64,000 nt of DNA, taken from the NCBI GenBank assembly GCA_010909165.1, contig MU008166.1, positions 868,001-932,000 on the forward strand, read 5' to 3'. Made by a program: the position numbers and the translations under genes. The notes beneath the pieces are model-generated. The model searched no databases, was not told the origin of the DNA, and saw only the letters and a list, made by a program, of their open reading frames with translations. Positions 35,168 through 58,249 of this stretch are shown here, piece after piece; the first letter of the stretch is position 1, and every line of letters starts with the position of its first letter. Origin of the DNA: Anthoceros angustus (taxonomy: Eukaryota > Plantae > Anthocerotophyta).

Positions 35168-36232
35168 ATGGCAAGAAGAAACAATCACAAGAGTATTCAT
35201 GCTAAGAGAACTAGAGAATTAGAGAGGGAAAGTAGAAGAATTATGCAGTCTCGTCGATCCTACAAACATAGTCGATTTAATTCTTCTCTTTTCAATAACT
35301 TAGGGAGCAAGATAGCCTACATGCTATCCTACTTCTTCCTAGAAAACAATTTGGTGTCATCATCAGCAACAGGAGCTTTTAGCAAACAAACATCAGCAAG
35401 GCCTTGGTCCACCAGTGATGATCCTGATCTGCTTCGATGCTGTGGAGATATCTCAAGTGATGAGAATCAGAAGTCCTCGTCCTATCATTCACACAACAAG
35501 GAGACCAACTCACCATTTTATTCTCCAACCACACCAGTACAGAGTAATTCTTCGTCACACCATTCTAATCGATCAGGTCAGCATCATTCCACGGTTTCTG
35601 CTAAGAAACTCTATTATGCTGATGGAGCAACACCCTCAGCAAACACTCAACAAGTTACTCACAAAGTACTTCATAATGCAAATTCAACTAATCCTGATTG
35701 TACATGTGGTTCTGAGCGTACGTATGGGCAGCAATGTTTTCAAAACAAGCTCCAACTTGACGACTCACTCGGCCATCTCCTACAGCCTGCAAACCATGAA
35801 ACAACCTATCAACAAGTTCAAGTTGAGATTTCTGCTGCTGCAGATTTTCTTTCTCGATTCCGAAGAAATCAGCATGGTTTATCTCGAGATCTCACCGCCA
35901 CGCCTAGTGCAAATGCCCCATATCGCCATCGCCTTCAGATCAACATATCGGGGGTCCAACCACTGAAATTCAAAAGAAATCATTTGCAAATCCTAACAGC
36001 CATTCTTCTGCAAATCTCCGTCTTGAATCTCCTCACCGCTGCAATCTTACTCCATATGGTGCACCTCTCACGGCGATCGGATCCCATCCAAGACCGGTTC
36101 CAATCTCGAATCGACTCGGATCGAGGCGGTACTCTTCATGTTTTCGAGGCTAATTCGATTCATCGGTTGCGCACAATCTTTGGGCGATGGCGCCTTCTCC
36201 GGCCCCTGCATCTAGCGCCGAGGAAATGGTGA
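35168..36232 (+). CDS. Extra ORF of unknown function inside the copia element, between the PBS and gag
   Basis: 354-codon ORF with a basic N-terminus and S/H/N-rich middle; no recognisable motif. Confidence 0.35.
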   Translation: MARRNNHKSIHAKRTRELERESRRIMQSRRSYKHSRFNSSLFNNLGSKIAYMLSYFFLENNLVSSSATGAFSKQTSARPWSTSDDPDLLRCCGDISSDENQKSSSYHSHNKETNSPFYSPTTPVQSNSSSHHSNRSGQHHSTVSAKKLYYADGATPSANTQQVTHKVLHNANSTNPDCTCGSERTYGQQCFQNKLQLDDSLGHLLQPANHETTYQQVQVEISAAADFLSRFRRNQHGLSRDLTATPSANAPYRHRLQINISGVQPLKFKRNHLQILTAILLQISVLNLLTAAILLHMVHLSRRSDPIQDRFQSRIDSDRGGTLHVFEANSIHRLRTIFGRWRLLRPLHLAPRKW

Positions 36233-36299
36233 AGAGGGCCCCGGATCGATGGAGATTGGTCGGCCCGGGCGGTTGTGGCGTCCAGCGCCCGCTCAACCT

Positions 36300-36403
36300 C
36301 GGCACCCGTTCGCGAACGGTGCCCTAAAAACTCTTTTTCGGCACCCGTTCGCGAACGGTGCCCTAAAAACATTATTTTGGCACCCGTTCGCGAAACGGTG
36401 CCG
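36300..36403. repeat. Three tandem palindromes GGCACCCGTTCGCGAACGGTGCC, 39-bp period
   Basis: Directly visible. Each unit is nearly self-complementary around TTCGCGAA. Confidence 0.9.
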
Positions 36404-39400
36404 TTTTAACCATCATTGGCCTTCGGGATCTTTAGCAAAGTAACATTTGATTTGCTCATATTCAAGCGTTGCTATATATATTTGAAGCCTTCTTAGCTTC
36501 TTATTATAACTTGGAGTTGGCAGTTCTTCTATATATATCTATCTACTTCTATTTAACCACTATTGCTTGATCCTATCATGATGGCCACCTCTCCAAATGT
36601 GCCACCCATTCCCATCATCAATTATATGAATGTGACATCTAATTTTAAGGAGAAGGACCGTTTCGACGGCACTAAGTTCGAAATATGGTCCAAACGTATG
36701 TGTTCTGTCTTAAATACCAGAGATCTAATTGGCATAGTTGATGGAACTGTCTTCAAGCCCATCGGGCCCTCGCCGGCCCTCGACTCTTGGTTGAAACAAG
36801 ACAAGCTTGCTATGCATATCCTTACCCCTCGATGAAGTCACTCTTCATCATTTGATGGGGCTACTACTGCTTGGCGGCTAGTAGATATTTTCAATCTACC
36901 AATGTTATGACATTAGTAACGGCGTAATAATTTTATTCTTACGCATGCATAATAATGAGAGCATTGGTACTTATGTTGGGAAGTTTCGATATCTTTGGGC
37001 CCATTGTCGCTTTAGGCACTCCTTATCGAATTTGAAGCTTGTGTCCAACTCGGCCTCCCTTCCCGCCGACTTTCAAGCATTTGTGTCCTCAATGGCACCG
37101 CTCGAGAGGCTCATCAGTAAAGGCGGCCGCACACCCAACATTTCCATCTCCGAAATTGCCTCCTTCAAGAGGAGGCTTCCAGTTCAACGCACTTCAAGCA
37201 TGGTGGTGAAAGAGTTATGTTCGTTAGCAAAGGCCGTCAGCGTCACTGACGGCCCGGCGTCGTCCTCCTCCACAGCCCTTCCTTCATTCTCCGGCGGTTC
37301 CAGTGCCTGGGGCTGGCTGCAGAAGAAAAGGTGAGCCTCGGCGCCCTTCAAGTCGCCAATATGGCCTCGACCTCCAAGCGAGCCGACATTGCCCTCATAC
37401 CGCTTGGTAGCTTTCAATACAAGACCTCTTGGCTATTGGACTCACCGCCTCGCATATTTGCCGCCATCACCATATGTTTTCGATTATCTCCTACCAAGAT
37501 CAACGTTTTGTTCTTCTCGCGATGACTCGACCTTACTATTGCGGGCACCGCATCAAGTATTTTACTCTTGAAGATGGTTCTGTCCTTCTTTTTGTGACAT
37601 GTTCCGCAAATGGCGAAGAATCTTATCTCCGTCCACTTGGTGAAGGACGGTACTTTCGAGCTAGAGTTGGCGGGCGATTGCCTCCTCACAAGATCTATTG
37701 CTCGGTCGCGTGGTTGCTAGAGGTCGTCGCGGCATGACCTCTATGTCTTCTCCACTGATCACTTTTCCTCGACCACGCCTCCCGCCATGGCCACTGGGTG
37801 AGGAGGAGTTCTCGCAAAGGTGACTCCTATTATGGCATTCTCGGCTTGGACATATTAATCATGATAAGCTTTTAGAGATGTCTAGGCGGGATTTATTTAG
37901 GGATAAGCTACCACACTTTTCAGACTCCTCCGTTATGTGAACCTTGTATATATGCTAAACAACGTAGCTTCCCTATCCTACTCTACTCGCCTCGGCTACT
38001 CATTGGAGTTGGTCCATGTTGATCTTTGTGGTCCACTCCCGGTCCCTTCACTTGGCGACCGCACTTTATGACTATTGTTGATGACTATAGTCGCTATACC
38101 TTTGCTATTCCGCTCAAGTTGAAGAGTGATTCCTTGGCTCCTTTACTCCTTTTGTCACTATGGTGCAAACCGGTTGCAAGCTTGGTGCATTAGATCGACA
38201 ATGCGGAGAATTAAATAACCGCAATTTAAGGACTGCCTTGAGAGGGGATTATCCGTCGGTTCGGTTCCTATACTTCTCAGAATGGGGTTCTTGAAAAGGC
38301 CAGCGATCTGCCCGCCAGCGCCCGCAGCTCCCCAAACCCTTCCGCGACATCGTGCATCGGTGGTTCTTTCAAGTCGGTTCGGCGGACACCCTTTGAGTCT
38401 GGCATGGATATAAGCCTCTTATTACTCATCTTCGGATTTTCACCCGCCTATGCTAATATTCCTCGCCGCAAGCTCGCCGTGTCGGGTATTTGTTGGCTAT
38501 GGCGAGGACCGTAAGGCTTATAAACTGGTTGACTTGGATACCCATGCTATTGTATATGCTCGCACTGTCACTTTTGATGAGGCTCGGTTAGCATCTGCTC
38601 GTTCTGAGTCCATGGATTTCGCTCGGCTCCTTTTACACGCTTCTTCCGACCCAGGTGACCTTATGCACGAGTTTTGACTCCTGCCCTTTCCTGACTGGGT
38701 CCCGCCACTGCTCCATCACGGCCTCTTCACCTCAAGCGGCACCTATACCTATTATCGCCGAGAAGATGAATGTGCCATTGTTGATCCTTATGAACAGAGA
38801 CGACTTTGGTGCTCTTAATTCCACAAGACCCGAGAGCCTCTCCACCTTCTCCGTAACACTTGATCCAGCCGGCGGTATCCCCGCCATCACAACCGAGACA
38901 CCTGGAATGAGATCCCTTTGATTTAGAGTTCAATCAAGTGGCTACACCACCACCGCCGCAGTCATTTCAACGCCTTGATGTTGCCCTTGAGAGGAGATCC
39001 TCTCACTCTTCAAGAGGCATATTTCACGACCGCAACTAAGTGGAAGTTTGCTATTGATGATGAATATAATTCTCTTATCAAAAACAATACTTGGACTCTA
39101 GTAAACTTGCCAAAGGCGTAACCATCAAATGCAAGTGGGTTCTCAAAACTAAATTCCGGAGGTTGAACCTCGTATTCGCTATAAGGCGAGACTAGTGGCT
39201 AAGGGTTATAGAAAGAGGGAGTGGACTATCGTATGATAAGGTTTATTCACCGTAGTCAAGGTCGCCTGTGAGAATGCTCCACGGCTTTATGTGCCGAGCT
39301 TAACTGAAATTTATCGACTTGATGTTTGTACGCTTTCCTTTATGGTCATGCAAGAAGAGATCTATATGGATCAACGAAGACTATGAAGATGAGCAATACC

Positions 39401-39803
39401 CAAACAAGGTGTGTAAACTTATTCGTTCTATTTACTGACTAAAGCAAAGCCCACGTTTATGGTATGAGAGAATGGACTCTTACCTCAAGAAGATAGGGTT
39501 TATCCAAAGTGAAGCGGACACCAATATCTATGTACTCAAGGATGCTCCTTGTGTTGCACTATATGTTGATGACTTAGTTATTCGGCAACAATATTGAACT
39601 AGTTAACAAGATTAAAGTGACCTTAGTAAAGAATTCGAGATGAAGGATCTCGGCAAAGTTAAATATATTCTTGGTATGCATGTACATAGAGATACCATCG
39701 GTGCTATCTATCTCCATCAAGGAAGATATGTAGGTATGTTAAAACGCTTCAATTTGGAGAATGCGGGCGCCCACACCAGGTGTTAAGCTTTCATCGCTAC
39801 ACA

Positions 39804-42800
39804 TCAATCGAGCAGGAAAAGAAAGAGATGGAAAATATTCCTTATCGTATGGGAGTTGGTACTCTCATGTTCTTGAGTAATCGACTGCACTGATATCTCA
39901 AATCATAAATGCTATTGCTCGGTTCTCGGAGAATCCGTGAAAGGATCACGGGTTGCTCTCAAGCGCATCATGCGGTACCTCAAGGGTACTCAAATTATGG
40001 CCTCTGCTCAAGCCTAGCGGAAGAAGCATGCCATCGACATGCTTTGTCGATGCATTTTTGACGACACGAAAAAGTATCTCGACATATTGCTTTCTGGCTC
40101 CATCGTTAATTGGTCTTGTAGAAAACAAGCTGCAATATCACTTTCATCAATGTAATCGAGTACAAAGCACTCACAAGCCACGAAGAGGCGAATGGGAAAG
40201 AAAGCTATGTGAAGATTTGGATATGAAGCGTGAAGGTGCTTAATTGTGACAATATGTCGCCATTGCTCTTGTCGCTAATCCGTCTTTCATGCGAAGCATA
40301 TTGAGATTCAACACCATTATATTCGTCGCTGAGAGAGGAATTGTTAAGGCATGTGTACCCAGCATGACAATACAGCAGAGATATCGACAAAATCCTTGCG
40401 AAGTTCAAACACCGCCCACAGAGAAGGGCTTGGATTGGTTGATCAGAGCTGTCACCACACATTTGGTGAGGCGATCTTATCTCGAGCGTTCGATTACTTG
40501 AAGTTGATGACTATTGTAGACCGCTTGCTTCAATCTTACTTGACGGTGACGATCGGTGAGTTGAGTTTAGTTGAAGACCGTAGTACTTATACAATACTCC
40601 AAATGCAAATGATTATTAGTTCTTTGATTTAGATAACCCAACTAGTCCGAGAGGGAGAGTTAGAAGCAGATCGTTGGTTATGGTTACCTTAGCTAAACCC
40701 ACCGTGGTCATACCCTTTGGTATCTAGTAATCAAGAGGTACAACTCTTGTGCTATAAAAGCCCACCTCTTGTAATCAATTGTATCAATTAGTAAAGCACT
40801 AAACCTTGATCAAACGCCTGCAGCACCTCAACCGACCACCGAGCTCGCCTCCACTCTTGCTCGTGGAAGGGAGCAGTTCATGGCTTCTAGCGCCACCTTG
40901 CATCAAGGTATTTCGAGTCGACTGCTTCTTTTCTACCGCGATGAGGTTCCACTGGTTTGGTCCAACCTTTGGCTGCTCTGTTTAGACACGCCGTAGCCCT
41001 CGCCTCCACCGGTGGGGCGGCGCACGCATCACGCCTCGACGCCATGTTCTCGATGGCCAAGGAAGACCGTTTCGTTGTGGATGGTGTAATGCACCTTGCC
41101 CGGACACCATCTCAAGCATCATCAACCCTCCGGGTTGGGTGGCGGAGATGCGCGACAATGAAGGTTCACAAGTACTCGCCCATGCAAGAAGGGCCACGCC
41201 TTCATCCCCTTGCTATCGAGACTCATGGGGCCATGGGCAAGGATTTCTCCGGTTCATCAAGGCTGTATAAAGCCTACCATGGAATGCGTTGGTCTCCCCT
41301 TTTCTTGTGTGATGGCTTTTTCGTGCAACGCGTGTCCATTGCCCTGCTAGGAGTTCTCCCTGTGGGCGCAAGAAGGTGGACTTCAACAATAGCCGCTTCA
41401 ATCGAGCAGGAAAAGAAAGAGATGGAAAATATTCCTTATCGTATGGGAGTTGGTACTCTCATGTTCTTGAGTAATGTCGGACGATATCTCAAATCGTAAA
41501 TGCTATTGCTCGGTTCTCGAGAGAATCCGAGGAAAGGATCACGGGTTGCTCTCAAGCGCATCATCACGGTACCTCAAGGGTACTCAAATTATGGCCTCTG
41601 CTTCAAGCCTAGCGGAAAGAAGCATCACTCTTGACATGCTTTGTCGATGCAGTTGGGCTTGACACGAAAAAGTATCTCGACATATTGCTTTCTTCTTGGC
41701 TCCATTGTTAATTGGTCTTGTAGAAAACAAGCTGCAATATCACTTTCATCAATGTAATCGAGTACAAAGCACTCAAGCCACGAAAGATGAATGGGAAAGA
41801 AAGCTATGTGAAGATTTGGATATGAAGCGGGAAGGGCCAACGTTGTAATATGACAATATAGCCATTGCTCTTGTCGCTAATCACATCTTTCATGCGAAGC
41901 ATATTGAGATTCAACACCATTATATTCGTGACTGAGAGAGGAATTGTTAAGGTACTGTATGTACCCATGTCTGAGATATCTTGACAAAATCCTTGCGAAG
42001 TTCAAAACACGCTTCCACAGAGAAGGGCTTGGATTGGTTGGTATGTGACTTTTGAAGTGGACCATCACACATTTGGTGAGGCGTATCTTATCTCAGAACG
42101 TTCAGTTACTTGAAGTTGACAGCTATTGTAGACCGCTTGCTTCAATCTTACTTGCGACCGGTGACGATCGGTGAGTTGAGTTTAGTTGAAGACCGTAGTA
42201 CTTATACAATACTCCAGCGGCAAATGATTATTAGTTCTTTGATTTAGATAACCCAACTAGTCTGAGAGGAGAGTTAGAAATGCATCGCGTTGGTTATGGT
42301 TACCTTAGCTAAACCCACCGTGGTCATACCCTTTGGTATCTAGTACCGAAGAGGTACAACTCTTCAGACACAGGCTATAAAAGCCCTCCTCTTGTAATCA
42401 ATTGTATCAATTAGTAAAGCACTAAACCTTGATCAAACGCTTCCGCAAAGCACCTCAAACTGACCAGCTCGAGCTCGCCTCCACTCTTGCTCAGGGAAGG
42501 GAGCAGGTTCATGGCTTCTAGCGCCACCTTGCATCAAGGTATTTCGAGTCGTACCGGCTTCTTTTTCTACCGCGATGAGGTTCCGCCTGGGTTTGGTCCA
42601 ACCTTTGGCCTGCTCTGTTTAGACCTGCCGCCGTAGCCCCTCGCTCTCCAGCTGGTGGGCAGCGCATTGCTACGCATCACGCCGTCTTCGACGTCATGTT
42701 CTCGATGGCCAAGGGAAGACCAGGTTTCCGTTGTGGATGTGGTCGTAACAGACCTTGCCCGGGACACCATCTCAAGTACGTCATCATCAACCCTCCAGGT

Positions 42801-44599: not shown

Positions 44600-45750
44600 G
44601 ACAGGTGCGTGTAGAGATGGAACTGAAGACTGGATACACCAAGCGATACGATTTCATTTAAATGCCGAAGTACTTGGGGGATGAAGCATTGGCGTGCTAT
44701 CGAGAGTACAAGGCGAGGTTGTTGAGCGGCACATCTAGAGGACCAGTTTATAGCAGTTCGAGCTCCGTTGGAACCAATACATCTGCAGTAGAAACTGGGA
44801 CACCTACGGCAAGAACTAGTACAGACGGAGCAGTAGCACCAAGTGGGCAAGATCTCATTAAAGGGATGTTTGACATCTTCCGGCTGGAGTTTCCTGCAAG
44901 CACGGATGAGAAAATCTCCGAGCTAACACACTTCGAGCTGAAGTCAGGCAAGGTTGCGAAGATGGCTTACCGAAGAATCGACCGGTTGGTACGTGACACT
45001 AAGATCATGAGTGACCGACTAGCTGCGGAGAAGTATTTGCAAGCATTGCCATATGCGTTGCGCATGAAGGTACAACAAGCGGTGCATAGCACGAAGGAGC
45101 AACACTACAGCCTTAAGGAAGTGTACGAGAGATGACTGATAAGATAGGGCCTGCTAACACTTTCTCTTGTGTTATTGCAAGTGATCACTCCAATACAAGT
45201 AGGAGTGGTGGACGACATGATCGATGCGGAGGTCAAAGTGGAGGAGCTCGGCGAGACAAGCCAGCCCACACAGCCCAAATGACGAGCCTTGTATGAGGTG
45301 CCGAGGGACAGACCATTCCCCTCATGAGTGCGAACATGCATTCGGAGGAGTCAAGGGTGAGGAGCCGTGCCCTGGCTGTGGAGGTATGGGAACAATGAAG
45401 TGGCGTGTTGGGAGAAGCATATGGAATTACGGCCTATGTCCGACTGAGCAGCAACCTCGGCCAATGCATCTGCTTCAATCTCATCCACAAAATCAACGAC
45501 GAGGAAAGGTGCCATGGAGGAGGCACCGGCAAAGTCCCGTGGACAGAAGAAACTGGAAGCATCAAAGAAACGATGGACAGCTACGTGACATGCCTCGCAA
45601 AGCTGGAGAAATTGGTGCGGAAGGTGAAGATCAAGGAGAGCAACAGTTCATCATCAAGAAGAAGACGAGCACAAGCTTGGATACATGGCGACATTGACCA
45701 GATCCAAGGGCAAGAAGAAGAAACCTTTAGCAGCTATGAGAGAAGATAGC
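44600..45750 (+). mobile_element. Degenerate Ty3/gypsy-like gag with zinc knuckle(s)
   Basis: Gag-like ORF 44662-45135 (FRLEFP...EKYLQALP), followed by CMRCRGTDHSPHEC (CX2CX4HX4C) and CPGCGGMG, with frameshifts. Confidence 0.65.
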
Positions 45751-47611: not shown

Positions 47612-49144
47612 TTAGGCAGCCAGGGCAAACCCAACACGCTCCTTGCCGTAGTCGAAGATGGTGTGGTAGACACCCATGAACACATCTCCCAATATCCACA
47701 AGGGTCCACTGGGTGGAGGCACATCGAGCCCGATGAAGCCGCTGATGCACTGTGCGTCCTTGTCTTCCCCGATCTGCAGAATGTAGTCCTCGGGCCCCAG
47801 CACGAAACTCTTTCCAGCAATGGTGAAGGAGATCTGGGGCAGAGTGTGCACAACATCACAGCCCACCACCGACTCGCCAGCAGGGCTGGGGAGGTTGTCG
47901 CAGAGGTCATCCAGGTACTTCTCGATCTGGGCCTTGGTCTGGTTCTCCCTCAGCTGGTTTTGGGCCCAGATGACAGCCATCTCACAGACAGTGCATGCCA
48001 CATCACTCCCCACTCCCCCAAGGCTTTTTTGCTCCTCCTCCTCCTCCACCACGGTTTTGATCACAGGGTCGGAGACAGCAGCGTAGCACACCCCAATCTG
48101 CTTGCAAATCTTCCCGGAAGCCACTTGGGCGATGAGCAGGTCGATGATCACATCACTGTACTGTGACACCACCGTCTTGCAAGCCTGGCTCACCACTCCA
48201 GTGGCCCCGATGGCGTGGTTGATCTCCGCTACTATCCCCGTCGGCCCGGCCAGGAGAGAGGTTCCCGAGTCCACGATGGCCTGGCACCCGCCTGCGCAGA
48301 AGCCGGTGCTCTTACCTCCAATTAGCACATCGCCCATATCGATCTGCCAGTACCCTCGCTTGGTGACCGGGGTGTAGGTATGCTCTCCTACGAAGTGGGC
48401 ATCATCCACTCCACCCAACACCAGCTCTCCTCCGGCCTTGCCATTAGGGTCCCTGTTGAGCCAGAAGGAGAAGACTGGTTCTGGCACCAGGTTCTGGTCC
48501 ACGATGTTGTTCCACACAGGCACCACCCCGTCCACAGAGATCTCAGGAAACCCCAGCCCCAGGATTCCGTCGAACTTGGCTGCCAGGAAGGTGAGCCCGG
48601 GCTCCTTGGTGGCCTCGGCGAACACCTGCCCCTTCACCACGATGTCTCCCAGCGTCAGGTCGTCCTGGCTCAAGAAGCCGGACATGGAGCCAGTCCCGTA
48701 CTGAATTGCGAAGGACTTGCCGTTCGCCTTGTAGGTGCTGGACTTGCTGGAAGAATATCTGGAGTGGAAGTAGCAGGCCAGGGACAGATAGCACTTGGCC
48801 GAGGGCACCCACAGGTTGGAGCTCCCCGTGTCGAAGATGACGGTGAATTGCTGCGGCGGAGTCCCCAGCCCGATCTCGCCATAGTACTGCGCATCCAGGT
48901 AGTTGTTCAGGGCCACGTAGTCCGGGGACGAGCCCACCAACCCGTTCTCCGCCCCTTCCAGCCTCTGCCGCAAACCCTGCACCCTCTCCCTCACGCTCTT
49001 GATGGCCGTCTTGACGCCCTTCTCATCCAGCCGCTTCTTGTGCAAGCCCACCTTCACGGCTCCCTCCGCTCCCTCGTGCCACAGGCTGGACAAAAGCAAC
49101 ACACATGCCACCGCCCACCAAAGGCGCACCATAGCCGCGGCCAT
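47612..49144 (-). CDS. Phytepsin-type aspartic proteinase A1 with plant-specific saposin insert, single exon
   Basis: Signal peptide, DTGSSNLW and DSGTS catalytic motifs, PSI cysteines, WILGDVFMGVYHTIFD. Confidence 0.96.
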   Translation of the reverse strand: MAAAMVRLWWAVACVLLLSSLWHEGAEGAVKVGLHKKRLDEKGVKTAIKSVRERVQGLRQRLEGAENGLVGSSPDYVALNNYLDAQYYGEIGLGTPPQQFTVIFDTGSSNLWVPSAKCYLSLACYFHSRYSSSKSSTYKANGKSFAIQYGTGSMSGFLSQDDLTLGDIVVKGQVFAEATKEPGLTFLAAKFDGILGLGFPEISVDGVVPVWNNIVDQNLVPEPVFSFWLNRDPNGKAGGELVLGGVDDAHFVGEHTYTPVTKRGYWQIDMGDVLIGGKSTGFCAGGCQAIVDSGTSLLAGPTGIVAEINHAIGATGVVSQACKTVVSQYSDVIIDLLIAQVASGKICKQIGVCYAAVSDPVIKTVVEEEEEQKSLGGVGSDVACTVCEMAVIWAQNQLRENQTKAQIEKYLDDLCDNLPSPAGESVVGCDVVHTLPQISFTIAGKSFVLGPEDYILQIGEDKDAQCISGFIGLDVPPPSGPLWILGDVFMGVYHTIFDYGKERVGFALAA

Positions 49145-49480: not shown

Positions 49481-49705
49481 GCGAGTATGGCGTGTGGATT
49501 AGTGACACGGCGGCGAAGGCATGTCCTTTCTTGGCGTCGTCGACACCCCACCAACGGATATAGGTCTTAGATGCGTGTTAGGGGGCGGTGCTTCCAAATC
49601 CGGCAAATCAGCGGCCAAATTTAGAGCCGGGCTATGGTTGGCGAGCTTTTTTGACTGCCGGCGACACGAGTTTGCTGGAAAAGAGCAATGACGGGAGCAG
49701 ATGGA

Positions 49706-49787
49706 AAGGAAAGGGAAAGGGAAAGGGAAAGGGAAAGGGAAGGCACTGATTGAGGCCCTTGGGAAAGGGAAAGGACTGATTGAGGCC
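49706..49787. repeat. (GGGAAA)n microsatellite with a short duplicated flank
   Basis: Directly visible. Confidence 0.85.
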
Positions 49788-50442
49788 AGTTCACTTGCAA
49801 AAGCGGTGGAGCAGAGCCTGAGGTGCTTTCGAGACGCCTCGTGAATGTCACTGGGTGGTTGCAGCCCGGGGAGAAGTAGGAATCGGATGTTGGTGATGAG
49901 CATCTAGGGAATGCGGCTCTGCATTTGCGGCATTGCATGTTTCTTGTTGGGCTACGAGAGCAGCGTGCTGGTGGGCAGGGCAAGGCCCACCTTGATGCAG
50001 GACTGTGCTGAAGATGGGCCCACCATCGCTGTCTGTATGGTGGGTGGTGGAGCCGGGCCCACCGATGAACGAAAGAAGGCGCTGTCTGTTTGCCAGAGGA
50101 CACGGTTGTGAGAACCGTAGAAGAGTGCAGTTCACGCTCCAGGTTGTCGTAGTGTGGGGAAGTGGTTTGAACTGGAGGTTGATGAGTGGTGGGCGCTGGA
50201 GCAGCTAGGGCTGCGTCAGACTGTCCATTTGTCGGGGTTCGGGACGGGACCGAGGGGTGGGAAAGGTGAAGATTCTGCGGGGAAAGGGGAGGTGTGAGTG
50301 GGACGGGCCGGGAGTGGGGGCTGCGGGTTTCGCGGAGTTGTTTGAGGCGCTGTTGCTGGAAGGTTCAAGTTTCGGATCTCGGTCGATCGGGAGAAGGATC
50401 TGGGAGAGGGTTTAGATCTTGAGGTTTGGTGTACCGGAGGTG

Positions 50443-53206
50443 ATGGAGCTGTCAGAGACAGCGAGCTGGCTGCAGCAGGCACTTCTGGATCTTTGCTCCG
50501 ACTCGGCTTCGGGCCTGCAGCTGGAGCCGGATGTGGTGACATCGCTGGTGTCCTACTGCGAGCTGGCTTCTCCTGTTGATGCATCGGAGTATATCAGGGT
50601 GAGTTTGTGGGTCCTTGAGGATCTCAGGTGGAGTTGGGAGTTGGGTTGGTTGTTTCTGGAGTGTGACAGTTGGGTGCTGTGTTTCTGTGTGAGGCAGACT
50701 ATCGTTGGGGACAAGCGGAGCAAGGACATTGTAGCAGAGTATTTACGGCGAAGAGGAGGAGGTAGTGACAAGGCGGAAAGTGTAGAGGGGGCAGTGCGGC
50801 CGAAGAAGGGTGTAGACGAATTTTATGCTGTCAGCAGCAAAAAAGGCAGCAAGAATGGGAGCAGACAGAGGAGTGTAGGTTCAGAAGGACAGGTGTCCGG
50901 TAAGGATCGGGGACCTTCTGTAGTGTCTGGAGTGGCCTCATTCATCAAAACAGGGGTGGCGAAGACCAGAGCAGTGACCTCAAAGGCAAAGAAAGGAGGC
51001 AAGTCAGTCTCGCTCTCAGAGGCAGCAGACGGCTCAGTAGTTTTCCGTGGTGGTCAGCCTTGCAATTGCCAAGCTAGCAGGCATGGGCTTGTAAATAATT
51101 GTCTGTCTTGTGGAAAAATTGTGTGTGAGCAGGAGGGTGAAGGACCCTGCAACTTTTGTGGGGCTCTGGTACTGCGGGAAGGCAGTGAGTATGCTGGTTT
51201 GGAAGGTGTTATCTCAGTCGCTTCCACAGACTCGGAAGCTGCTGCCATTAAGTTCAAAAATAGGCTTGTTGAGTATGGGAGGAACTCTGCCCCTCGCACA
51301 GCTGTGATTGATGATCAGACAGACTACTATCAGATGCAAGGGGATGCTTGGTTGTCTGCAAAGGTTTGTCTCTCATTCTAGTTGTCAAGTTGATCACTTG
51401 TGTGGGTTGGTTGTCTTAGAAATAGCAGTCGTCTGTCTCTTCTGACCAGGTTTGCTGTTCTTTGGTTCTTCAGGAAAAGGAGGAGCTCCGGAAGAAGCAG
51501 GAGGAAAACGAGGCGTTGGAAGAGGAACGTCGAAAGAGAGTTGTCGTGACTGTAGATCTACTTGGTCGCAAGGTTTGTGTGCAACTGTATCCTCCTCTGG
51601 TGCTCTGAGCAATCGTTTGTGTGGAGTGATCCCAATTCTTGTTGCCACAGGTGGTTTTGGCTGCTTCGGAAGTTGGAAACCAGAATGGGGAGAGAGGTGT
51701 ATCTATACTCACAGGTGGGGCAGGAGGAGTGGATGGAAGGAATGCAATCCGGATCAGACCTAATCCCTCCCTACAGGAGCAGCCTACTTTTGTTGGTACT
51801 AAGTCACATCAAGGGCGGAGGTCGAAGACCTCTGTTTTTGTTCCCAACACTGGCCGGGTCCAGCATGAGGATCCTTTTCTCAATTCAGTTTTCAGTTTGC
51901 ATGAGAAAGATACCACTGTAAAGGTTGTTGAAGGAAATTGGTGGAACCAAAACCGCAATGGAGTTGACTATCCACCTAGACTGCCAAAGGTATCAGAAAG
52001 GTCTGAAAGACGAGGGGATGAAGATGAAGCTTGCAATATGGAGAGACTGGAGAGCAGAAATGGGGGAGCTACTGCTTCGGTTTCAGGGGCCAGCGAAAGC
52101 AAAAACCCAAATAAGACCGGCAAAGGCAACAAGGAGGCTGATGGCCGGCCTCAACATTTCAGGAGTAAATCTTCTATGGATAACTCGGCTTCTGCACCGT
52201 CGTTTGATATATGCCCACCCCTTATTGAGGGCTCTGATGGAAGAGGGTGGCCTTTAAAATTGGCTGCCTCATTGCTGGATGTGAAGAGGGCCGAGAGGCA
52301 GGAAAGCCTGGGCAGAAGCATCCCGCAGGTGGAGTCTGTGCACCACTTGTCTCCCGGCATTGCCTTCTTGAGAAGTTGGCTAACGATTGGCGAGCAGGTG
52401 AGGCTGGGTGTTCCGTGGCAGGCTGTCATTGCAAGCGCTCTAGCTCCTGTTGCTGTGTGCATATGTGTAATTATGTTCTATTTGTGGCAGGTGGAGATTG
52501 TGAATGAATGCCGCAAGCTTGGGCTTGGTCCTGGAGGCTTCTACACCCCATCCTATGCTGACGGCAAAAGCTTGCACTTGAGAATGATGTGCCTTGGGAA
52601 GCACTGGGAACCCAACACAAATGCCTATGAAGTCAGACGCTCTTATCACGACAACGCAGAGCCACCTCCAATTCCGGCAATTTTTCTGAAGCTGGTAGAT
52701 AAAGCCCTTTCTGCAGCGAAGGCTAAGAATCAAGAGGTTGGAGGAAAAAAGAAGGCCCGAGACAAAGACATCACATTTCCAAGGATGGTTCCAAATATCT
52801 GTGTCGTGAACTTCTATGAGCAGACTGGCAATTTGGGAATGCATCAGGTGAATCCATGTTACCAATTGAAGGCTCTGCTTCCATCTTGTTGTCAGGATCT
52901 GTGCAGCTGAACGAGTGTTGTATTTTGCAGGATAAGGCAGAAAGCCCGGAAACCTTGAAGAGGGGCTCTCCTGTGGTTTCCTTCTCGATTGGAGACTCAG
53001 CTGAGTTTTGCTTCGGAAAAGACAGGGACTTGGAGAACGCTGAGAAGGTGGTACTAGAGTCTGGAGATATTTTCATCTTTGGGGGCCCTGCAAGAATGAT
53101 CTTCCACAGTATTACCAGGGTGCACCCCAAGTCAGCACCTGCTGCCCTTGTTGAGAAAGCAAACTTACGGCCTGGTCGTTTAAATCTTACATTTCGTGAG
53201 TTTTAA
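50443..53206 (+). CDS. ASC-1/TRIP4 (zf-C2HC5) - ALKBH1-like 2OG-Fe(II) dioxygenase fusion. Exons 50443-50598, 50698-51363, 51474-51572, 51651-52397, 52491-52847, 52931-53206
   Basis: ASC-1 part: CNCQASRH..NCLSCGKIVCEQEGEGPCNFCG, RLVEY..RTAVIDDQTDYY, VTVDLLGRK, RIRPNP, TGRVQH. The same ORF continues into FDIC, LSPG, LGLGPGGFY, MMCLG, PNICVVNFY, HQ|D, FHS, RLNLTFR. Confidence 0.85.
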
Positions 53207-53301
53207 GGCTTGCGACGTGAGTCTTAAGGCTTGCGAAATTTTGTTGCCTCAGATAATCTTATAAATGTACGTGTCGTCGTTCGTACCTTCTTGCTTGGGA
53301 G

Positions 53302-56300
53302 GGGAGCTTGGATGCGTGCGACTACAATGGCGCTTCGGGCTTCTCTTCTTTTCTCTGGCATTGCCCTATGGTAAAAGAAGCGCTCTTCAAGATTTAAGGA
53401 TGTCGCTCCAATGAGAACTGTTTCACAGAGCTGTCACAGCATTTCACATTCCCCTGACCACGAGGGTCGGATACACCTGGCCACAGACTACTTTAACACA
53501 CACAATGCTTAGGCTGTGATGGCTATCCAAAGTACAAGACTGATAACTAGTATGCTGAAGGAACCGTTGGCATAACTGCCCTTCGTGATGAGCATCCCTG
53601 CTGTTTTGCACTCAAGGAAGGGTTTAGGGAATGTGTGAGCTAGCCCATAGCCTCCTGCAATCACCTGCTCAAGGCTGTGATATCGCCAATGGATCATGGA
53701 ATACAGGTGAGAAACATTGAGCCGTTTGCTCCATGGGAGAATGAGAATCTTCTCATAGCCAGGAAGGGGAGGTAAGTAGAGAATGTGAGGAAGTCGAACA
53801 CACAGCTCCCTGTCTGACCCATTCCTTTATTAGATTCGCAATTTCTGATATGACAATGCCCAAACCAACGAAGCAGGCCCAGAGCGCTCTTTTGAAAATG
53901 AAAAGGGCCACAGACCCACCCACGCCTGTGCGAGCAGATATCCAAGCGCGTCATCTTCCTGATACCTCACATGAACAACCCCCGGACACAGCCCGGTTGC
54001 AGCTCCGCGATTTCGCGACAGACATCTTACGATGTCTACACTTGTATGTGAACGATTCCCAATCCACCCGCCAGAACGCTGACAGCTTCCGTAAATGAGA
54101 AATCGTCGTCCTGGAAACAGAGAACAACAGTGGTTACGAAGATCCCAAGTCCAAGACCTCGTTAGCTGAGAGGCATCAGCTTTCAGCACCACAAGCTGGA
54201 GGAATCCGCCAGGCAGGGTGCACAGCTATGAACACCTGAACGTGCCTCTACGGAATCCCCACCCAAATATCCCAGATTACCTCACCAGGACAAAATTTGG
54301 TCTGCAGATTCTCTCACATCCATTGTCGACAAAACAGTTTGCCTCCGCAAGAGCTGCAGCGCAAATGCTTCAACAAAGGACGGGACATTCAATGCACCTA
54401 GATTCCAACATCTTCTCGATACACGCGCCTTGCGCATACATTCAGCAGCAAGTCAGCCTCCGTGATGACACTGCTCCCGGTCTCCTTACCGTGTCACAGC
54501 ACTTACGGTTCGATTCACAGACTTAAACAGTCCAGTTTCGGTCCCTGGGCAGACATCACAATGCCAAATTCCCCGTATGTAAAGAGATCCTCGCAAATCA
54601 GAGAAGAAACCCTCAGGAGTGGGCTCTAGATGAGTCCAGAATCTTCACCTTCACCTACTTTCGGCATCACGCACGTACATAATCTGATATTGGTTTTGAC
54701 CATGCCTTGATCGATACGTCTATTCCTTTTCCTGTTCCTTGTTCTTGTCACACCGTGACCAAAGAATGACTAGATGGTTTCAAGGAAATACATCAACATG
54801 GTAGATTGACAACGGACATATCGATCGGCCTTCCTCGTCGGGTGAATCAAGGTGAATCATCAACCCTGCCGGTGTACTGCTAGACTGTGCTGCACGCTGC
54901 AAGTTCATGGCAGCACGGTTTCCCAGGCAGCACGGTTTCCCAGGCAACACAACTTCTAATACTTAAACTTTGCCAGGAACATCCTGTATAGGACATAGTC
55001 ACTTAAGCCACCGGCCATCACTCAGAAATCCTCGGCAAACCTGTACTCCTGCAGCCAGGGACATTACAGGGCGAGGTAACATGTAGTGTGGCCCCCTGCA
55101 GGCTGCAGGAGGAGCGTGACATAATTTTAGGTATGGAATGGGTCGAGGATAGGTATCAGGAACTCCCAGATGAGATGGAGGAGGAGGGAGCTTGGATGCG
55201 TGCGACTACAATGGCGCTTCGGGCTTCTTCTTTCTCTGGCATTGCCCTATGGTAAAAGAAGCGCTCTTCAAGATTTAAGGATGTCGCTCCAATGAGAACT
55301 GTTTCACAGAGCTGTCACAGCATTTCACATTCCCCTGACCACGAGGGTCGGATACACCTGGCCACAGACTACTTTAACACACACAATGCTTAGGCTGTGA
55401 TGGCTATCCAAAGTACAAGACTGATAACTAGTATGCTGAAGGAACCGTTGGCATAACTGCCCTTCGTGATGAGCATCCCTGCTGTTTTGCACTCAAGGAA
55501 GGGTTTAGGGAATGTGTGAGCTAGCCCATAGCCTCCTGCAATCACCTGCTCAAGGCTGTGATATCGCCAATGGATCATGGAATACAGGTGAGAAACATTG
55601 AGCCGTTTGCTCCATGGGAGAATGAGAATCTTCTCATAGCCAGGAAGGGGAGGTAAGTAGAGAATGTGAGGAAGTCGAACACACAGCTCCCTGTCTGACC
55701 CATTCCTTTATTAGATTCGCAATTTCTGATATGACAATGCCCAAACCAACGAAGCAGGCCCAGAGCGCTCTTTTGAAAATGAAAAAGGGCCACAGACCCA
55801 CCCACGCCTGTGCGAGCAGATATCCAAGCGCGTCATCTTCCTGATACCTCACATGAACAACCCCCGGACACAGCCCGGTTGCAGCTCCGCGATTTCGCGA
55901 CAGACATCTTACGATGTCTACACTTGTATGTGAACGATTCCCAATCCACCCGCCAGAACGCTGACAGCTTCCGTAAATGAGAAATCGTCGTCCTGGAAAC
56001 AGAGAACAACAGTGGTTACGAAGATCCCAAGTCCAAGACCTCGTTAGCTGAGAGGCATCAGCCAGCACCACAAGCTGGAGGAATCCGCCAGGCAGGGTGC
56101 ACAGCTATGAACACCTGAACGTGCCTCTACGGAATCCACCCAAATATCCCAGATTACCTCACCAGGACAAAATTTGGTCTGCAGATTCTCTCACATCCAT
56201 TGTCGACAAAACAGTTTGCCTCCGCAAAAGCTGCAGCGCAAATGCTTCAACAAAGGACGGGACATTCAATGCACCTAGATTCCAACATCTTCTCGATACA

Positions 56301-57074
56301 CGCGCCTTGCGCATACATTCAGCAGCAAGTCAGCCTCCGTGATGACACTGCTCCCGGTCTCCTTACCGTGTCACAGCACTTACGGTTCGATTCACAGACT
56401 TAAACAGTCCAGTTTCGGTCCCTGGGCAGACATCACAATGCCAAATTCCCCGTATGTAAAGAGATCCTCGCAAATCAGAGAAGAAACCCCTCAGGAGTGG
56501 GCTCTAGATGAGTCCAGAATCTTCACCTTCACCTACTTTCGGCATCACGCACGTACATAATCTGATATTGGTTTTGACCATGCCTTGATCGATACGTCTA
56601 TTCCTTTTCCTGTTCCCCTTGTTCTTGTCACACCGTGACCAAAGAATGACTAGATGGTTTCCAAGGAAATACATCAACATGGTAGATTGACAACGGACAT
56701 ATCGATCGGCCTTCCTCGTCGGGTGAATCAAGGTGAATCATCAACCCTGCCGGTGTACTGCTAGACTGTGCTGCACGCTGCAAGTTCATGGCAGCACGGT
56801 TTCCCAGGCAGCACGGTTTCCCAGGCAACACAACTTCTAATACTTAAACTTTGCCAGGAACATCCTGTATAGGACATAGTCACTTAAGCCACCGGCCATC
56901 ACTCAGAAATCCTCGGCAAACCTGTACTCCTGCAGCCAGGGACATTACAGGGCGAGGTAACATGTAGTGTGGCCCCCCTGCAGGCTGCAGGAGGAGCGTG
57001 ACATAATTTTAGGTATGGAATGGGTCGAGGATAGGTATCAGGAACTCCCAGATGAGATGGAGGAGGAGGGAGCT
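53302..57074. repeat. Near-identical tandem duplication of ~1.88 kb (53302-55185, 55186-57074)
   Basis: Identical small ORFs in both copies. GGGAGCT occurs at the start, junction and end. Confidence 0.95.
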
Positions 57075-58249
57075 GCTTGTGCGCAAAGCTACATCACATA
57101 CAGTTCGATGAAGCCAGGGACGAAGCCCTGGGAAAGCTGCGCATACAGTTGCTGTGGGTAAGCCAGAGGCTGGAATCCATCCGAAAATACGTCGCTTGCT
57201 AACTGTGTTTGGACATGTAGCGGCCCGTCCGATGCCCATGGCTAATAGTAAATCAAGATTGGTAGGGCAACGAGCGCGACGAAGATCAATCTGCAGCAAC
57301 CAGCAAATGCATGGTACACTTTTGTTACTGCTCCGTGTCCAGCATTCCGGTGGATTGCAGGTGATGCAGTATTTGGGGACCAGAATTCTCACGCCCACAC
57401 AACTTTTTGCAGCTCTGCACTCCTACCATTTGTCAGTTTGCTCTGTTGGTGTTCCAGGAGGGACGTGGAACACTCGTGACCCGACAGCGGGGGTTCGAGT
57501 TCCAGATCGCAGAGGCCGGATGCGGTTGAATCAACGCACAAGGTCATGAGGATGTTTGGTGAAACAAACTCGAAAGGCTCGAGTTTTTTCTGTCGGTGTC
57601 TGTAGCTTGTGAAAGTTCTCCATGCGCTGTCGGCTGGGAAGACATCACTGTCAGCCGCGTAGTTGAGAAAGTTGCAGTCACACCACGCCGTGTCCGCCGC
57701 TGCCAGTTTGCCTAAAAGCTGCGTGAAGCAACCCGCTTGGCGTGGCTGCAACACTGCCAACCAGACACCCTTGTATTCAAAATAATATAAACATTGAAAA
57801 TATATATTGTATATTAGAGGGTTGCAGTCACCTGCTTGAGAAACAACGCTTTTCAAACCGTCCTCCTCCATCCCCATACCCAAGTCCACAAGCGCTTGTT
57901 TTCGCTCTTGTTATGGGAAAGAGGTGCAAGTTGCTACTCTGGCTCCTCCATGGATATGTGGATTCGCCCCTGGATATGTGGATTCAGATGGCATCAGTAT
58001 CTTTCACAATTACGGTGTGATTATGCCTGGGCTTGGTGCAGCCACCAGCTTCTTCACTCCAAACCCGAGAGTGCATGTCTGCCCTTGATGATCTCCTTCA
58101 CTCCTAATCCAGGAGTGCAGTTTTGCCCTTATGTGCGATACATGTTGTTGATTGATTTTAGAGATGCGATACATGTTGTTGATTGATTTTAGAGAGAGCG
58201 TGAATATCTACTTAGAGATGAGAAGCTCAGGGCTAACTTGTACCTCGTC

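What the first reader, a model, noticed from the sequence alone, without database searches (positions are those of the whole stretch)
50443..53206. ASC-1/TRIP4 zinc finger fused in frame to an intact AlkB (ALKBH1-type) dioxygenase
Seen: one stop-free frame (ORF 51639-52910) carries the last ASC-1 motifs (RIRPNP, TGRVQH), a ~100 aa disordered linker and the start of the AlkB domain (FDIC, LSPG..LRSWL). The fusion therefore needs no speculative splice between the two domains. The HxD (HQ|D), distal H and RxxxxxR ligands are intact. Known: in angiosperms the zf-C2HC5 gene and ALKBH1-type genes are separate. In animals ASC-1 belongs to the ASCC complex, whose ASCC3 helicase recruits ALKBH3 for alkylation repair, and its yeast homologue Rqt4 acts in ribosome quality control. 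Inference: this is a Rosetta-stone fusion tethering a different AlkB paralogue to the ASCC/RQT machinery, possibly for nucleic-acid dealkylation at stalled ribosomes or polymerases. I do not know of it being described.
Basis: partly seen in the sequence, partly recalled or inferred. Interest (0 to 1): 0.88.

Follow-up and report, generated by a model that had tools for sequence, protein, structure and literature searches.

The report
TRIP4–AlkB fusion gene, ancestral in green plants
This plant gene really does join the helicase-docking half of the TRIP4/ASC-1 protein to an intact AlkB demethylase in one transcribed reading frame, but the fusion is the old, conserved form of TRIP4 from green algae to conifers rather than a local novelty, and nobody has yet studied what it does.

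Summary
A six-exon gene (50443-53206, + strand, 766 codons) encodes the TRIP4/ASC-1 N-terminal domain, the C2HC5 zinc finger and the TRIP4 third domain. Exon 4 (51651-52397) then carries the last TRIP4 motifs, a roughly 110-residue linker and the start of an AlkB dioxygenase, with no splice between them.

Intron-free contigs from three related species run from the zinc finger to the 3'UTR. A more distant relative (L001) has the same single exon, and replacement changes are far rarer than silent ones, also in the linker. All eight zinc ligands and the HxD, H and RxxxxxR catalytic residues are present.

The fusion is not new to this genome. The same architecture occurs in chlorophytes, zygnematophytes, liverworts, mosses, a lycophyte, ferns and conifers, already deposited as "hypothetical protein". 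A 2026 Ginkgo paper mentions it in passing. Green-lineage TRIP4 has no ASCH domain; AlkB sits in its place.

Angiosperm AlkB-only ALKBH1C/D (OsALKBH1-type "6mA demethylases") nest inside the fused clade as sister to the gymnosperm fusions.

Best reading, inferred and not tested: a dealkylase tethered to the ASCC3/RQT helicase.

The joined spliced protein was never built or searched.

The parts
50300..50442 (+). 5'UTR. This is the upstream limit of the transcript contigs. It contains no upstream ATG.
   Evidence: Contig record 1 of run X1 starts at 50300; sequence.
50443..50598 (+). Exon 1, 52 codons: the start of the TRIP4 N-terminal helical domain.
   Evidence: 63% identical to residues 12-57 of Diphasiastrum P0004. 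Helices 8-76 in the orthologue model. The GT..AG joint 50599-50697 is removed in contigs.
50698..51363 (+). Exon 2, 222 codons: a K/S-rich disordered stretch, the dual zinc finger and the first part of the TRIP4 third domain.
   Evidence: Pfam. Matches human ASC-1 chain 8alz_A at 2e-24 over residues 136-213 and 265-303, and yeast RQT4 at 5e-5.
51055..51177 (+). zf-C2HC5 dual zinc finger. All eight ligands (C, C, H, C, C, C, C, C) are present.
   Evidence: PF06221, E 7e-13. Residue-by-residue alignment to the human TRIP4 zinc finger. Ligand positions are invariant or nearly so in 17 fusions. Ligand numbering is from PMC10076317.
50999..51132 (+). Alternative GC..AG intron of 134 nt inside exon 2. 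Its removal deletes the first half of the zinc finger, shifts the frame and gives a stop at 51138-51140.
   Evidence: The joint 50996>51131 can slide by up to 3 places and is seen in X1, X6 and X16, with only 27 letters on its shorter side. Translation after the joint.
51474..51572 (+). Exon 3, 33 codons: the second half of the TRIP4 third domain (a helix).
   Evidence: PF23134, E 8.5e-9. 67-76% identical to orthologues, matching them from one exon boundary to the other.
51651..52397 (+). Exon 4, 249 codons: the junction exon. It carries the TRIP4 tail, the linker and the AlkB N-terminus in one exon.
   Evidence: Stop-free. Covered without a break by one contig per species in three species. 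The orthologous single ORF is L001 4665-5426. Replacement changes are far rarer than silent ones in all three sub-parts.
51750..51866 (+). RIRPNP...PTFV...TGRVQH. This is the counterpart of the start of the human TRIP4 'lasso' peptide that wraps the ASCC3 winged-helix domain.
   Evidence: Profile-profile alignment of plant fusions against animal TRIP4 runs up to RIKPNP..PVFV = VNPNI..PxWVD. P351, P353, P359, R388, Q390 and H391 are invariant or nearly invariant in the fusions. Lasso residues 375-424 are from PMC10076317. The match of RVQH to animal RIQD is my inference.
51876..52202 (+). Low-complexity linker of about 110 residues, predicted disordered.
   Evidence: The corresponding part of the orthologue model has pLDDT below 50. 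pN 0.35 against pS 0.68 versus L001. The two other species carry a 45-nt in-frame insertion here.
52203..52397 (+). The AlkB domain begins here (FDIC ... LSPGIAFLRSWLTIGEQ).
   Evidence: F491, D492 and C494 are invariant in the fusions. The same FDIC start is present in the AlkB-only angiosperm protein P0011.
52491..52847 (+). Exon 5, 119 codons: the AlkB core, ending in H-Q of the HxD iron motif.
   Evidence: Matches rice OsALKBH1 (5xeg) at 2e-31; alignment A3.
52931..53206 (+). Exon 6, 91 codons plus TAA: the D of HxD, the distal H (53105-53107) and RxxxxxR (53177-53197).
   Evidence: PF13532, E 1e-22. Matches 5xeg at 1e-30. H670, D672, H730, R754 and R760 are invariant in 17 fusions.
53207..53327 (+). 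3'UTR. The main transcript contig ends at 53327; a thin contig reaches 53459.
   Evidence: Records 3 and 4 of X1.

Best explanation
Shown here: a single, expressed, selectively maintained gene encodes a 766-residue protein. Its N-terminal half is a TRIP4/ASC-1 (yeast Rqt4) orthologue: helical N-domain, dual C2HC5 zinc finger, third domain and a lasso-like tail. Its C-terminal half is a catalytically complete AlkB Fe(II)/2-oxoglutarate dioxygenase of the plant OsALKBH1 / ALKBH1C-D clade, and it stands where animal TRIP4 carries its ASCH domain. This is the ancestral TRIP4 architecture of the green lineage. Angiosperms carry the two halves as separate genes.

Inferred mechanism: in human TRIP4 the zinc finger docks on the C-terminal cassette of the ASCC3 (Slh1/RQT2-type) helicase, and the lasso places the C-terminal domain at the nucleic-acid exit. 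By analogy, the flexible linker of about 110 residues would hold the AlkB domain where the single strand leaves the helicase. There it would oxidatively remove N-methyl groups: m1A/m3C-type alkyl damage, or N6-methyladenine as reported for its angiosperm relatives.

That would unite in one polypeptide the two partners, TRIP4 and ALKBH3, that compete for ASCC3 in humans. Whether the substrate is DNA (repair or transcription) or RNA (collided ribosomes) remains open.
For: Gene and transcript:
- Exon model, phases and GT..AG sites.
- Intron-free contigs in three species, one contig in each running from 51131 to about 53300.
- The orthologous locus L001 has the same upstream neighbour and the same single junction exon.
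- pN 0.23-0.35 against pS 0.68-1.0 across the tail, linker and AlkB start.

Domains:
- Pfam; human ASC-1 at 2e-24 and yeast RQT4; OsALKBH1 at 2e-31 and 1e-30.
- Profile-profile match to animal TRIP4: probability 100, E 6e-47, running up to the start of the lasso.
- Zinc ligands and HxD/H/R..R are invariant in 17 fusions.
- In the model of an orthologue the AlkB domain fits OsALKBH1 (TM 0.86) and E. coli AlkB (TM 0.73-0.81), and the linker is disordered.

Distribution:
- Fused proteins occur from chlorophytes to conifers.
- No green-lineage hit carries ASCH, while the animal hits do.
- The AlkB tree follows the species tree, with angiosperm AlkB-only proteins nested as sister to the gymnosperm fusions (100/98 and 99/93 support).

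Mechanistic frame from PMC10076317:
- The zinc finger is necessary and sufficient for ASCC3 docking.
- The lasso and ASCH domain sit at the DNA exit.
- TRIP4 and ALKBH3 bind ASCC3 mutually exclusively.
Against: - No binding to an ASCC3 orthologue was tested, and no ASCC3 sequence of this organism was available.
- The profile alignment with animal TRIP4 stops at the start of the lasso. The groove-inserting segment is matched only by a short motif (RVQH against RIQD).
- The plant linker is about 110 residues, whereas in humans ASCH follows the lasso directly, so the placement at the exit could be loose.
- The characterised relatives (OsALKBH1, AtALKBH1D) are reported as DNA 6mA demethylases without any known link to ASCC3.
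- Angiosperms, Selaginella and gymnosperms have TRIP4 copies without AlkB, so the tether is dispensable in some lineages.
- The transcript evidence is contigs, not full-length reads.
Confidence: 0.55

Rival explanations
1. A transcription- or chromatin-linked DNA N6-methyladenine demethylase. The TRIP4 half serves as a coactivator-type targeting module that brings the OsALKBH1-type enzyme to transcribed genes, without any need for helicase coupling or ribosome quality control.
For: The AlkB half is closest to OsALKBH1 and to the angiosperm proteins named DNA N6-methyladenine demethylase ALKBH1C/1D. OsALKBH1 and AtALKBH1A/1D are reported 6mA demethylases. TRIP4 was first described as a transcription coactivator.
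Against: In the cited human work, TRIP4 lacking the N-terminal region that holds this zinc finger no longer co-precipitated ASCC1, ASCC2 or ASCC3, and the finger alone bound the ASCC3 helicase region. The conserved parts of the plant N-half are exactly the zinc finger, the third domain and the lasso start. The in-vivo importance of 6mA removal by this clade is not settled; one paralogue is called a likely pseudogene and another nearly inactive.
Confidence: 0.25
2. The AlkB domain is retained mainly as a nucleic-acid-binding module. It would replace the ASCH domain's strand-handling role on the helicase, and catalysis would be secondary or lost.
For: It occupies the position of ASCH, and the role of ASCH in human TRIP4 is DNA binding at the helicase exit.
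Against: Every iron and 2-oxoglutarate ligand is invariant across 17 fusions, from algae to a conifer, and is present here. That pattern is not expected for a purely structural domain.
Confidence: 0.07
3. These are two neighbouring genes joined only by read-through or by contig assembly. A TRIP4-N gene would end near 52000, and an AlkB gene would start at the internal ATG at 52039-52041.
For: Contigs cannot show transcript ends, and overlapping transcripts could assemble into one contig (the caveat). Angiosperms do have the two halves as separate genes.
Against: The junction lies inside one exon with no stop. The linker is under purifying selection, and its indels keep the frame in four species. 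Full-length fused proteins and transcripts occur in dozens of green-lineage taxa. The exons match the fused orthologues from one exon boundary to the next.
Confidence: 0.03

Closest known systems
Human TRIP4/ASC-1 (subunit of ASCC and of the ribosome-quality-control trigger complex) and yeast Rqt4
   Same: An N-terminal helical domain, a dual C2HC5 zinc finger with all eight ligands, the third domain and the start of the lasso peptide are homologous.
   Different: Animal TRIP4 ends in PF23135 plus an ASCH domain. The green-lineage protein has no ASCH and instead carries a linker of about 110 residues followed by an AlkB dioxygenase.
Human ASCC3-ALKBH3 alkylation-repair module
   Same: It follows the same logic: an AlkB-family dealkylase coupled to the ASCC helicase machinery, which supplies the single strand.
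   Different: In humans ALKBH3 is a separate protein that competes with TRIP4 for ASCC3. Here the AlkB domain is covalently joined to TRIP4 and is a different paralogue: ALKBH3 ranks 46th among the structure matches, behind OsALKBH1, E. coli AlkB, ALKBH1 and ALKBH2. The coupling is inferred, not shown.
Rice OsALKBH1 (PDB 5XEG/5XOI) and Arabidopsis ALKBH1C/1D, reported DNA N6-methyladenine demethylases
   Same: These are the closest sequences and structures for the AlkB half (E about 1e-30 for each exon; TM 0.86 for the orthologue model), with the same FDIC start and the same catalytic residues. They belong to the same clade in the tree.
   Different: The angiosperm proteins are AlkB-only (about 400-560 residues) and lack the TRIP4 half. 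In the tree they are a derived, detached branch of the fused family.
Deposited fused orthologues, for example Diphasiastrum KAJ7531020.1, Marchantia AXG93_857s1170, Ceratodon M758_10G151100, Ceratopteris KP509_18G051500, Cryptomeria SUGI_0242230 and Closterium CLOM_g18939
   Same: They show the same three-domain architecture, the same order and the same invariant residues. The window's exons map collinearly on them.
   Different: All are unnamed or 'hypothetical' proteins, and no function has been assigned. The window's copy is the hornwort-type representative, 30-68% identical exon by exon to the lycophyte and liverwort proteins.
Fungal SAD/SRA-AlkB fusions (Iyer, Zhang and Aravind 2016)
   Same: They are another case of an AlkB dioxygenase fused to a nucleic-acid-targeting module.
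   Different: The partner domain and the lineage differ. That review discusses TRIP4 and its ASCH domain but does not mention the green-lineage TRIP4-AlkB fusion.

Membership tests
TRIP4 / ASC-1 / Rqt4 | C2HC5-type dual zinc finger with eight zinc ligands | tested here: met
   PF06221, E 7e-13. Aligned ligand for ligand with the human TRIP4 zinc finger. The positions are invariant or nearly so in 17 fusions.
TRIP4 / ASC-1 / Rqt4 | TRIP4 third domain and N-terminal helical domain homologous to animal TRIP4 | tested here: met
   PF23134, E 8.5e-9. hhalign of fusions against animal TRIP4: probability 100, E 6e-47, columns 32-362 against 20-394.
TRIP4 / ASC-1 / Rqt4 | Lasso peptide that wraps ASCC3 (human residues 375-424) | tested here: inconclusive
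   The profile alignment reaches RIKPNP..PVFV = VNPNI..PxWVD at the start of the lasso. The later RVQH/RIQD resemblance is at motif level only.
TRIP4 / ASC-1 / Rqt4 | C-terminal ASCH domain (animal form) | tested here: not met
   No PF04266 or PF23135 in the window's ORFs or in any green-lineage hit. The animal hits have both.
ASCC / RQT complex subunit | Physical binding to the ASCC3/Slh1 helicase | not testable with these tools
The claim is inferred from human data.
AlkB family of Fe(II)/2-oxoglutarate dioxygenases | 2OG-FeII_Oxy_2 domain with the HxD...H iron triad and the RxxxxxR 2OG-binding motif | tested here: met
   PF13532, E 8e-12 and 1e-22. H-Q|D, distal H and R..R are in the sequence and invariant in the fusions.
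AlkB family of Fe(II)/2-oxoglutarate dioxygenases | Double-stranded beta-helix fold of AlkB type | tested here: met
   Tested on the model of the orthologue P0004, not on the window's own protein. Foldseek gives OsALKBH1 TM 0.86 and E. coli AlkB TM 0.73-0.81.
Plant OsALKBH1 / ALKBH1C-D clade | Falls inside that clade by sequence and tree | tested here: met
   The best PDB hit for both exons is 5xeg. In the careful tree all fused and ALKBH1C/D-type domains form one family that follows the species tree, and the window's exons fall among the bryophyte, alga and lycophyte fusions.
Mammalian ALKBH1 orthologue | Closer to ALKBH1 than to other AlkB proteins, with the ALKBH1-specific extensions | tested here: not met
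   Exon 6 matches E. coli AlkB and ALKBH1 equally (about 5e-6 to 1e-5). The orthologue model fits E. coli AlkB (TM 0.73-0.81) much better than ALKBH1 (TM about 0.4-0.47).
AlkB family of Fe(II)/2-oxoglutarate dioxygenases | Demethylase activity and substrate (DNA or RNA; m1A, m3C or 6mA) | not testable with these tools
   This needs enzyme assays.

The most novel reading that the evidence does not exclude
The green-lineage TRIP4-AlkB protein is a helicase-fed dealkylase. It would be the plant and algal counterpart of the animal ASCC3-ALKBH3 module, built into the TRIP4 subunit of the ASCC/RQT machinery. On this reading the angiosperm 'DNA 6mA demethylases' ALKBH1C/1D are its detached catalytic half, and they would still work with ASC-1/ASCC3 on alkylated or methylated single strands at stalled polymerases or collided ribosomes.
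Probability: 0.35. Interest if true: 0.75.

Novelty: new member of a known kind. Interest (0 to 1): 0.55.

Why it matters
The gene itself is an orthologue of proteins already deposited for many green plants and algae, so it is not a discovery of a new kind.

What this work adds is evolutionary context that I did not find in the searched literature:
- Green-lineage TRIP4 ancestrally carries an AlkB dioxygenase where animals carry ASCH.
- The fusion has been kept from chlorophytes to conifers.
- The angiosperm ALKBH1C/D enzymes, currently discussed as DNA 6mA erasers, descend from it.

In humans TRIP4 and ALKBH3 compete for the same helicase. A natural covalent TRIP4-AlkB protein is therefore a strong guilt-by-association hint for where this plant AlkB clade acts. 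It can be tested directly in Marchantia, Physcomitrium, Anthoceros or Chlamydomonas-type algae, and the result would bear on plant alkylation repair, ribosome quality control and the disputed biology of 6mA.

Tried and rejected
- Two genes or read-through: rejected (see rivals).
- Exon 4 alone against solved structures: no hit even at E up to 1. The TRIP4 tail could therefore be tied to the human lasso only through profiles.
- Rfam on 46-58 kb: nothing.
- No run is on record as RNA. RNA origin was deduced from the exact removal of the GT..AG introns in contigs. Depths were not used to rank isoforms.
- Literature searches for the fusion gave only one passing mention, in the Ginkgo paper. The 2016 review of adenine methylation and the 2026 ASCH preprint do not mention it. 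The 2006 ASCH paper is not in the library and was not read, so an earlier remark there cannot be excluded.
- The joined, spliced protein has no reference, so it was never built, searched or folded. All searches were made exon by exon or with stored orthologues. The structure model is of Diphasiastrum P0004, not of the window's protein.
- A stand-alone TRIP4, ASCH or ALKBH3 gene elsewhere in this genome could not be looked for. A word search of the scan's notes found none, which proves nothing.
- The backbone of the TRIP4-N tree is unresolved and the gymnosperm fused copies sit on a long branch. The 'seed-plant duplication followed by complementary loss' scenario therefore rests mainly on the AlkB tree and on Cryptomeria and Ginkgo each having two copies.
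Full report
**The observation.** ORF 51639-52910 is stop-free. Reading the sequence gives a six-exon model on the + strand:
- E1 50443-50598
- E2 50698-51363
- E3 51474-51572
- E4 51651-52397
- E5 52491-52847
- E6 52931-53206 (TAA)

Every exon has a length divisible by three, no exon contains a stop, and all five introns (99, 110, 78, 93 and 83 nt) are GT..AG. The sum is 766 codons.

Pfam finds zf-C2HC5 in E2 (7e-13), TRIP4_3rd split between E2 and E3 (8.5e-9), and 2OG-FeII_Oxy_2 in E4/E5 (8e-12) and E6 (1e-22). Exon 4 alone, 249 codons, holds RIRPNP, TGRVQH, a low-complexity linker, FDIC and LSPG..LRSWL.

**Transcripts.** No run holding the stretch is labelled RNA. When contigs of four runs were laid on 50200-53600, three runs had every one of the five introns removed exactly at the GT..AG sites, so they derive from spliced RNA. 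These are X1 (no differences from the window) and X6 and X16 (two related species, roughly 93-95% identical). The fourth run, X18, is genomic DNA of a relative and keeps the introns.

In each of the three species one contig runs from 51131, inside the zinc finger, through exons 3, 4, 5 and 6 into the 3'UTR (about 53280-53327). The relatives carry a 45-nt in-frame insertion in the linker. Contigs cannot show transcript ends, so additional shorter isoforms are not excluded. The continuous form exists in all three species.

**A fourth species and selection.** The exon-4 translation has a 253-residue relative (P0001, 53% identical) on a 6.8-kb genomic contig, L001. L001 has the same upstream neighbour as the window: an intronless phytepsin-type aspartic protease on the minus strand (window 47612-49144). 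It also has the same gene, and the junction exon is again one ORF that runs from the TRIP4 tail to LRSWLTIGEQ.

Codon comparison of the two junction exons gives these values:

| Sub-part | pN | pS |
|---|---|---|
| TRIP4 tail | 0.27 | 0.91 |
| Linker | 0.35 | 0.68 |
| AlkB start | 0.23 | 1.0 |

Silent sites are saturated while replacements are held down, also in the linker, and both sequences keep one open frame. The whole exon is coding sequence under purifying selection.

**What the two halves are.** E2 matches human ASC-1/TRIP4 (8alz_A, 2e-24, residues 136-213 and 265-303) and yeast RQT4 (5e-5). The zinc finger aligns ligand for ligand.

A profile of 17 fused plant and algal proteins aligns to a profile of animal TRIP4 with probability 100 (E 6e-47). 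The alignment runs from the N-terminal helical domain to RIKPNP..PVFV = VNPNI..PxWVD. By the numbering of Jia et al. 2023 (PMC10076317), that is the start of the lasso peptide (human 375-424) that wraps the ASCC3 winged-helix domain. The next invariant plant motif, GRVQH, resembles the animal RLRIQD segment. That equivalence is my inference, not a statistically supported alignment.

E5 and E6 each match rice OsALKBH1 (5xeg) at about 1e-30. The next hits, E. coli AlkB and mammalian ALKBH1, are equal at about 5e-6 to 1e-5. The iron triad is H-Q|D, split over E5 and E6, plus a distal H. The RxxxxxR motif is also present. All of these residues are invariant in the 17 fusions.

An AlphaFold model of the orthologue P0004 (not of the window's own protein) shows:
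- a helical N-domain;
- a weakly modelled zinc finger, since no zinc is included;
- two long helices, which form the third domain;
- a disordered stretch from about residue 301 to 517, covering the lasso and the linker;
- a confident AlkB domain.

Foldseek matches that AlkB domain to OsALKBH1 (TM 0.86) and E. coli AlkB (TM 0.73-0.81), and only then to ALKBH1 (about 0.4-0.47), ALKBH2 and ALKBH3. 'ALKBH1-type' is therefore right in plant nomenclature, but the domain is a compact AlkB-like module rather than a mammalian-ALKBH1 orthologue.

**Distribution.** An exhaustive HMMER search with ORF 51639-52910 returned, above the many AlkB-only proteins, long proteins that Pfam shows to be zf-C2HC5 + TRIP4_3rd + 2OG-FeII_Oxy_2. 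With names attached, the fused proteins come from:
- chlorophytes: Dunaliella, Edaphochlamys, Astrephomene, Gonium
- zygnematophytes: Mesotaenium, Closterium
- liverworts: Marchantia, Riccia, Calypogeia
- mosses: Ceratodon, Sphagnum
- a lycophyte: Diphasiastrum
- ferns: Ceratopteris, Psilotum, Adiantum
- a conifer: Cryptomeria

In all, 41 of the 399 proteins fetched by then carry both halves. The window's six exon translations map collinearly on the Diphasiastrum and Marchantia proteins, from one exon boundary to the next. No green-lineage hit has an ASCH domain, while all the animal hits have PF23135 plus ASCH.

Angiosperms, Selaginella, Ginkgo and Cryptomeria have proteins of about 420 residues named 'activating signal cointegrator 1' that carry only the zinc finger and the third domain. 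The one whose sequence I read (Selaginella P0168) ends where the linker begins in the fusions.

A 2026 genome-wide paper on Ginkgo notes, without comment, a zf-C2HC5 domain in GbALKBH1B (PMC13296198). I found no paper that discusses the fusion.

**History.** A careful maximum-likelihood tree of the AlkB domains follows the species tree:
- Chlorophyte fusions sit at the root that I imposed.
- Next comes an unresolved group of zygnematophyte, bryophyte and lycophyte fusions.
- Then come the fern fusions.
- Last is a seed-plant clade (100/98) in which the gymnosperm fusions are sister to the angiosperm AlkB-only proteins (99/93). Databases name these angiosperm proteins DNA N6-methyladenine demethylase ALKBH1C/1D.

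Cryptomeria has both a fused copy and an N-only copy. Ginkgo has an N-only copy and a second model of the fused type, truncated in the version I saw.

In the TRIP4-N tree the N-only copies of gymnosperms and angiosperms form one clade (support 96), and the N-halves of the gymnosperm fusions form a separate long-branched clade. The backbone is unresolved.

The simplest reading has three steps:
- The fusion is ancestral in Viridiplantae.
- The gene duplicated before the seed plants radiated.
- One copy lost AlkB and became the angiosperm ASC-1, while the other lost its TRIP4 half in angiosperms and became ALKBH1C/D.

The tree has no AlkB outgroup, and the rooting on chlorophytes is an assumption.

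**Mechanism.** Established in humans:
- The lasso and the ASCH domain then sit at the nucleic-acid exit and stimulate the helicase.
- ALKBH3, the dealkylase that uses ASCC3-generated single strands, binds ASCC3 mutually exclusively with TRIP4.

The plant protein keeps the docking elements and puts an AlkB enzyme on a flexible tether where ASCH would be. I therefore consider a helicase-tethered dealkylase the most likely mode of action, at roughly one in two. The process (DNA alkylation repair, transcription-linked demethylation, or RNA repair at collided ribosomes) and the substrate (m1A/m3C-type damage or 6mA) remain open.

The main rival is a DNA 6mA demethylase targeted by TRIP4 as a coactivator module, independent of the helicase, at about one in four. 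It rests on the reported activities of OsALKBH1 and AtALKBH1D. A purely structural AlkB domain is unlikely given the invariant catalytic residues. A two-gene artefact is very unlikely.

**Verdict.** The added value is the evolutionary framing and a concrete, testable hypothesis for the plant ALKBH1C/D clade and for green-lineage TRIP4.

- The joined spliced protein has no reference and was not built, searched or folded. Everything was done exon by exon or with stored orthologues.
- Read laying was given 3401 letters.

Noticed in passing
window 50999-51132: An alternative 134-nt GC..AG intron lies inside exon 2. Its joint appears in contigs of all three species, at a depth comparable to the retained form. 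Removing it deletes half of the zinc finger, shifts the frame and gives a stop at 51138-51140, so this may be a conserved unproductive (NMD-type) isoform. The evidence is a short contig with only 27 letters on one side of the joint.
   Followed up: partly
window 53350-57110: Directly after the gene's 3'UTR, a non-coding unit of about 1.88 kb is present twice in tandem (53350-55230 and 55231-57110) at 97-100% identity. This could be a recent tandem duplication or an assembly artefact. It has no Rfam match.
   Followed up: partly
window 47612-49144 (- strand): An intronless 510-residue ORF that looks like a phytepsin-type aspartic protease with a saposin-like insert, divergently oriented to the fusion gene. 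The orthologous ORF in L001 (593-2137) carries the Pfam domains Asp, TAXi_N, SapB_1 and SapB_2; the window's ORF itself was not scanned. The neighbourhood is conserved in L001.
   Followed up: partly
window 49700-49800: A GA/CT-rich microsatellite (it reads as GKGKGK in one frame and PFPFPF in another) lies in the roughly 1.15-kb intergenic region between the protease gene and the fusion gene.
   Followed up: no
window 44660-45750: ORFs with a retroelement gag-like look, including a CX2CX4HX4C zinc-knuckle-like motif, lie downstream of the Copia element that another note places at 34661-42466.
   Followed up: no
Riccia fluitans proteins P0010 (R1flu_002774) and P0153 (R1flu_002776): Two loci away from the liverwort's TRIP4-AlkB gene there is a second AlkB domain of the same clade, annotated as fused to a Ufd2P_core fragment. 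This is probably a tandem AlkB duplicate merged with a neighbouring gene in the annotation.
   Followed up: no
Cryptomeria P0402/P0462 and Ginkgo P0252/P0165: Gymnosperms carry two TRIP4-type genes, one fused to AlkB (or of the fused type) and one without AlkB. The N-half of the fused copies evolves much faster, sitting on a long branch in the TRIP4-N tree.
   Followed up: partly
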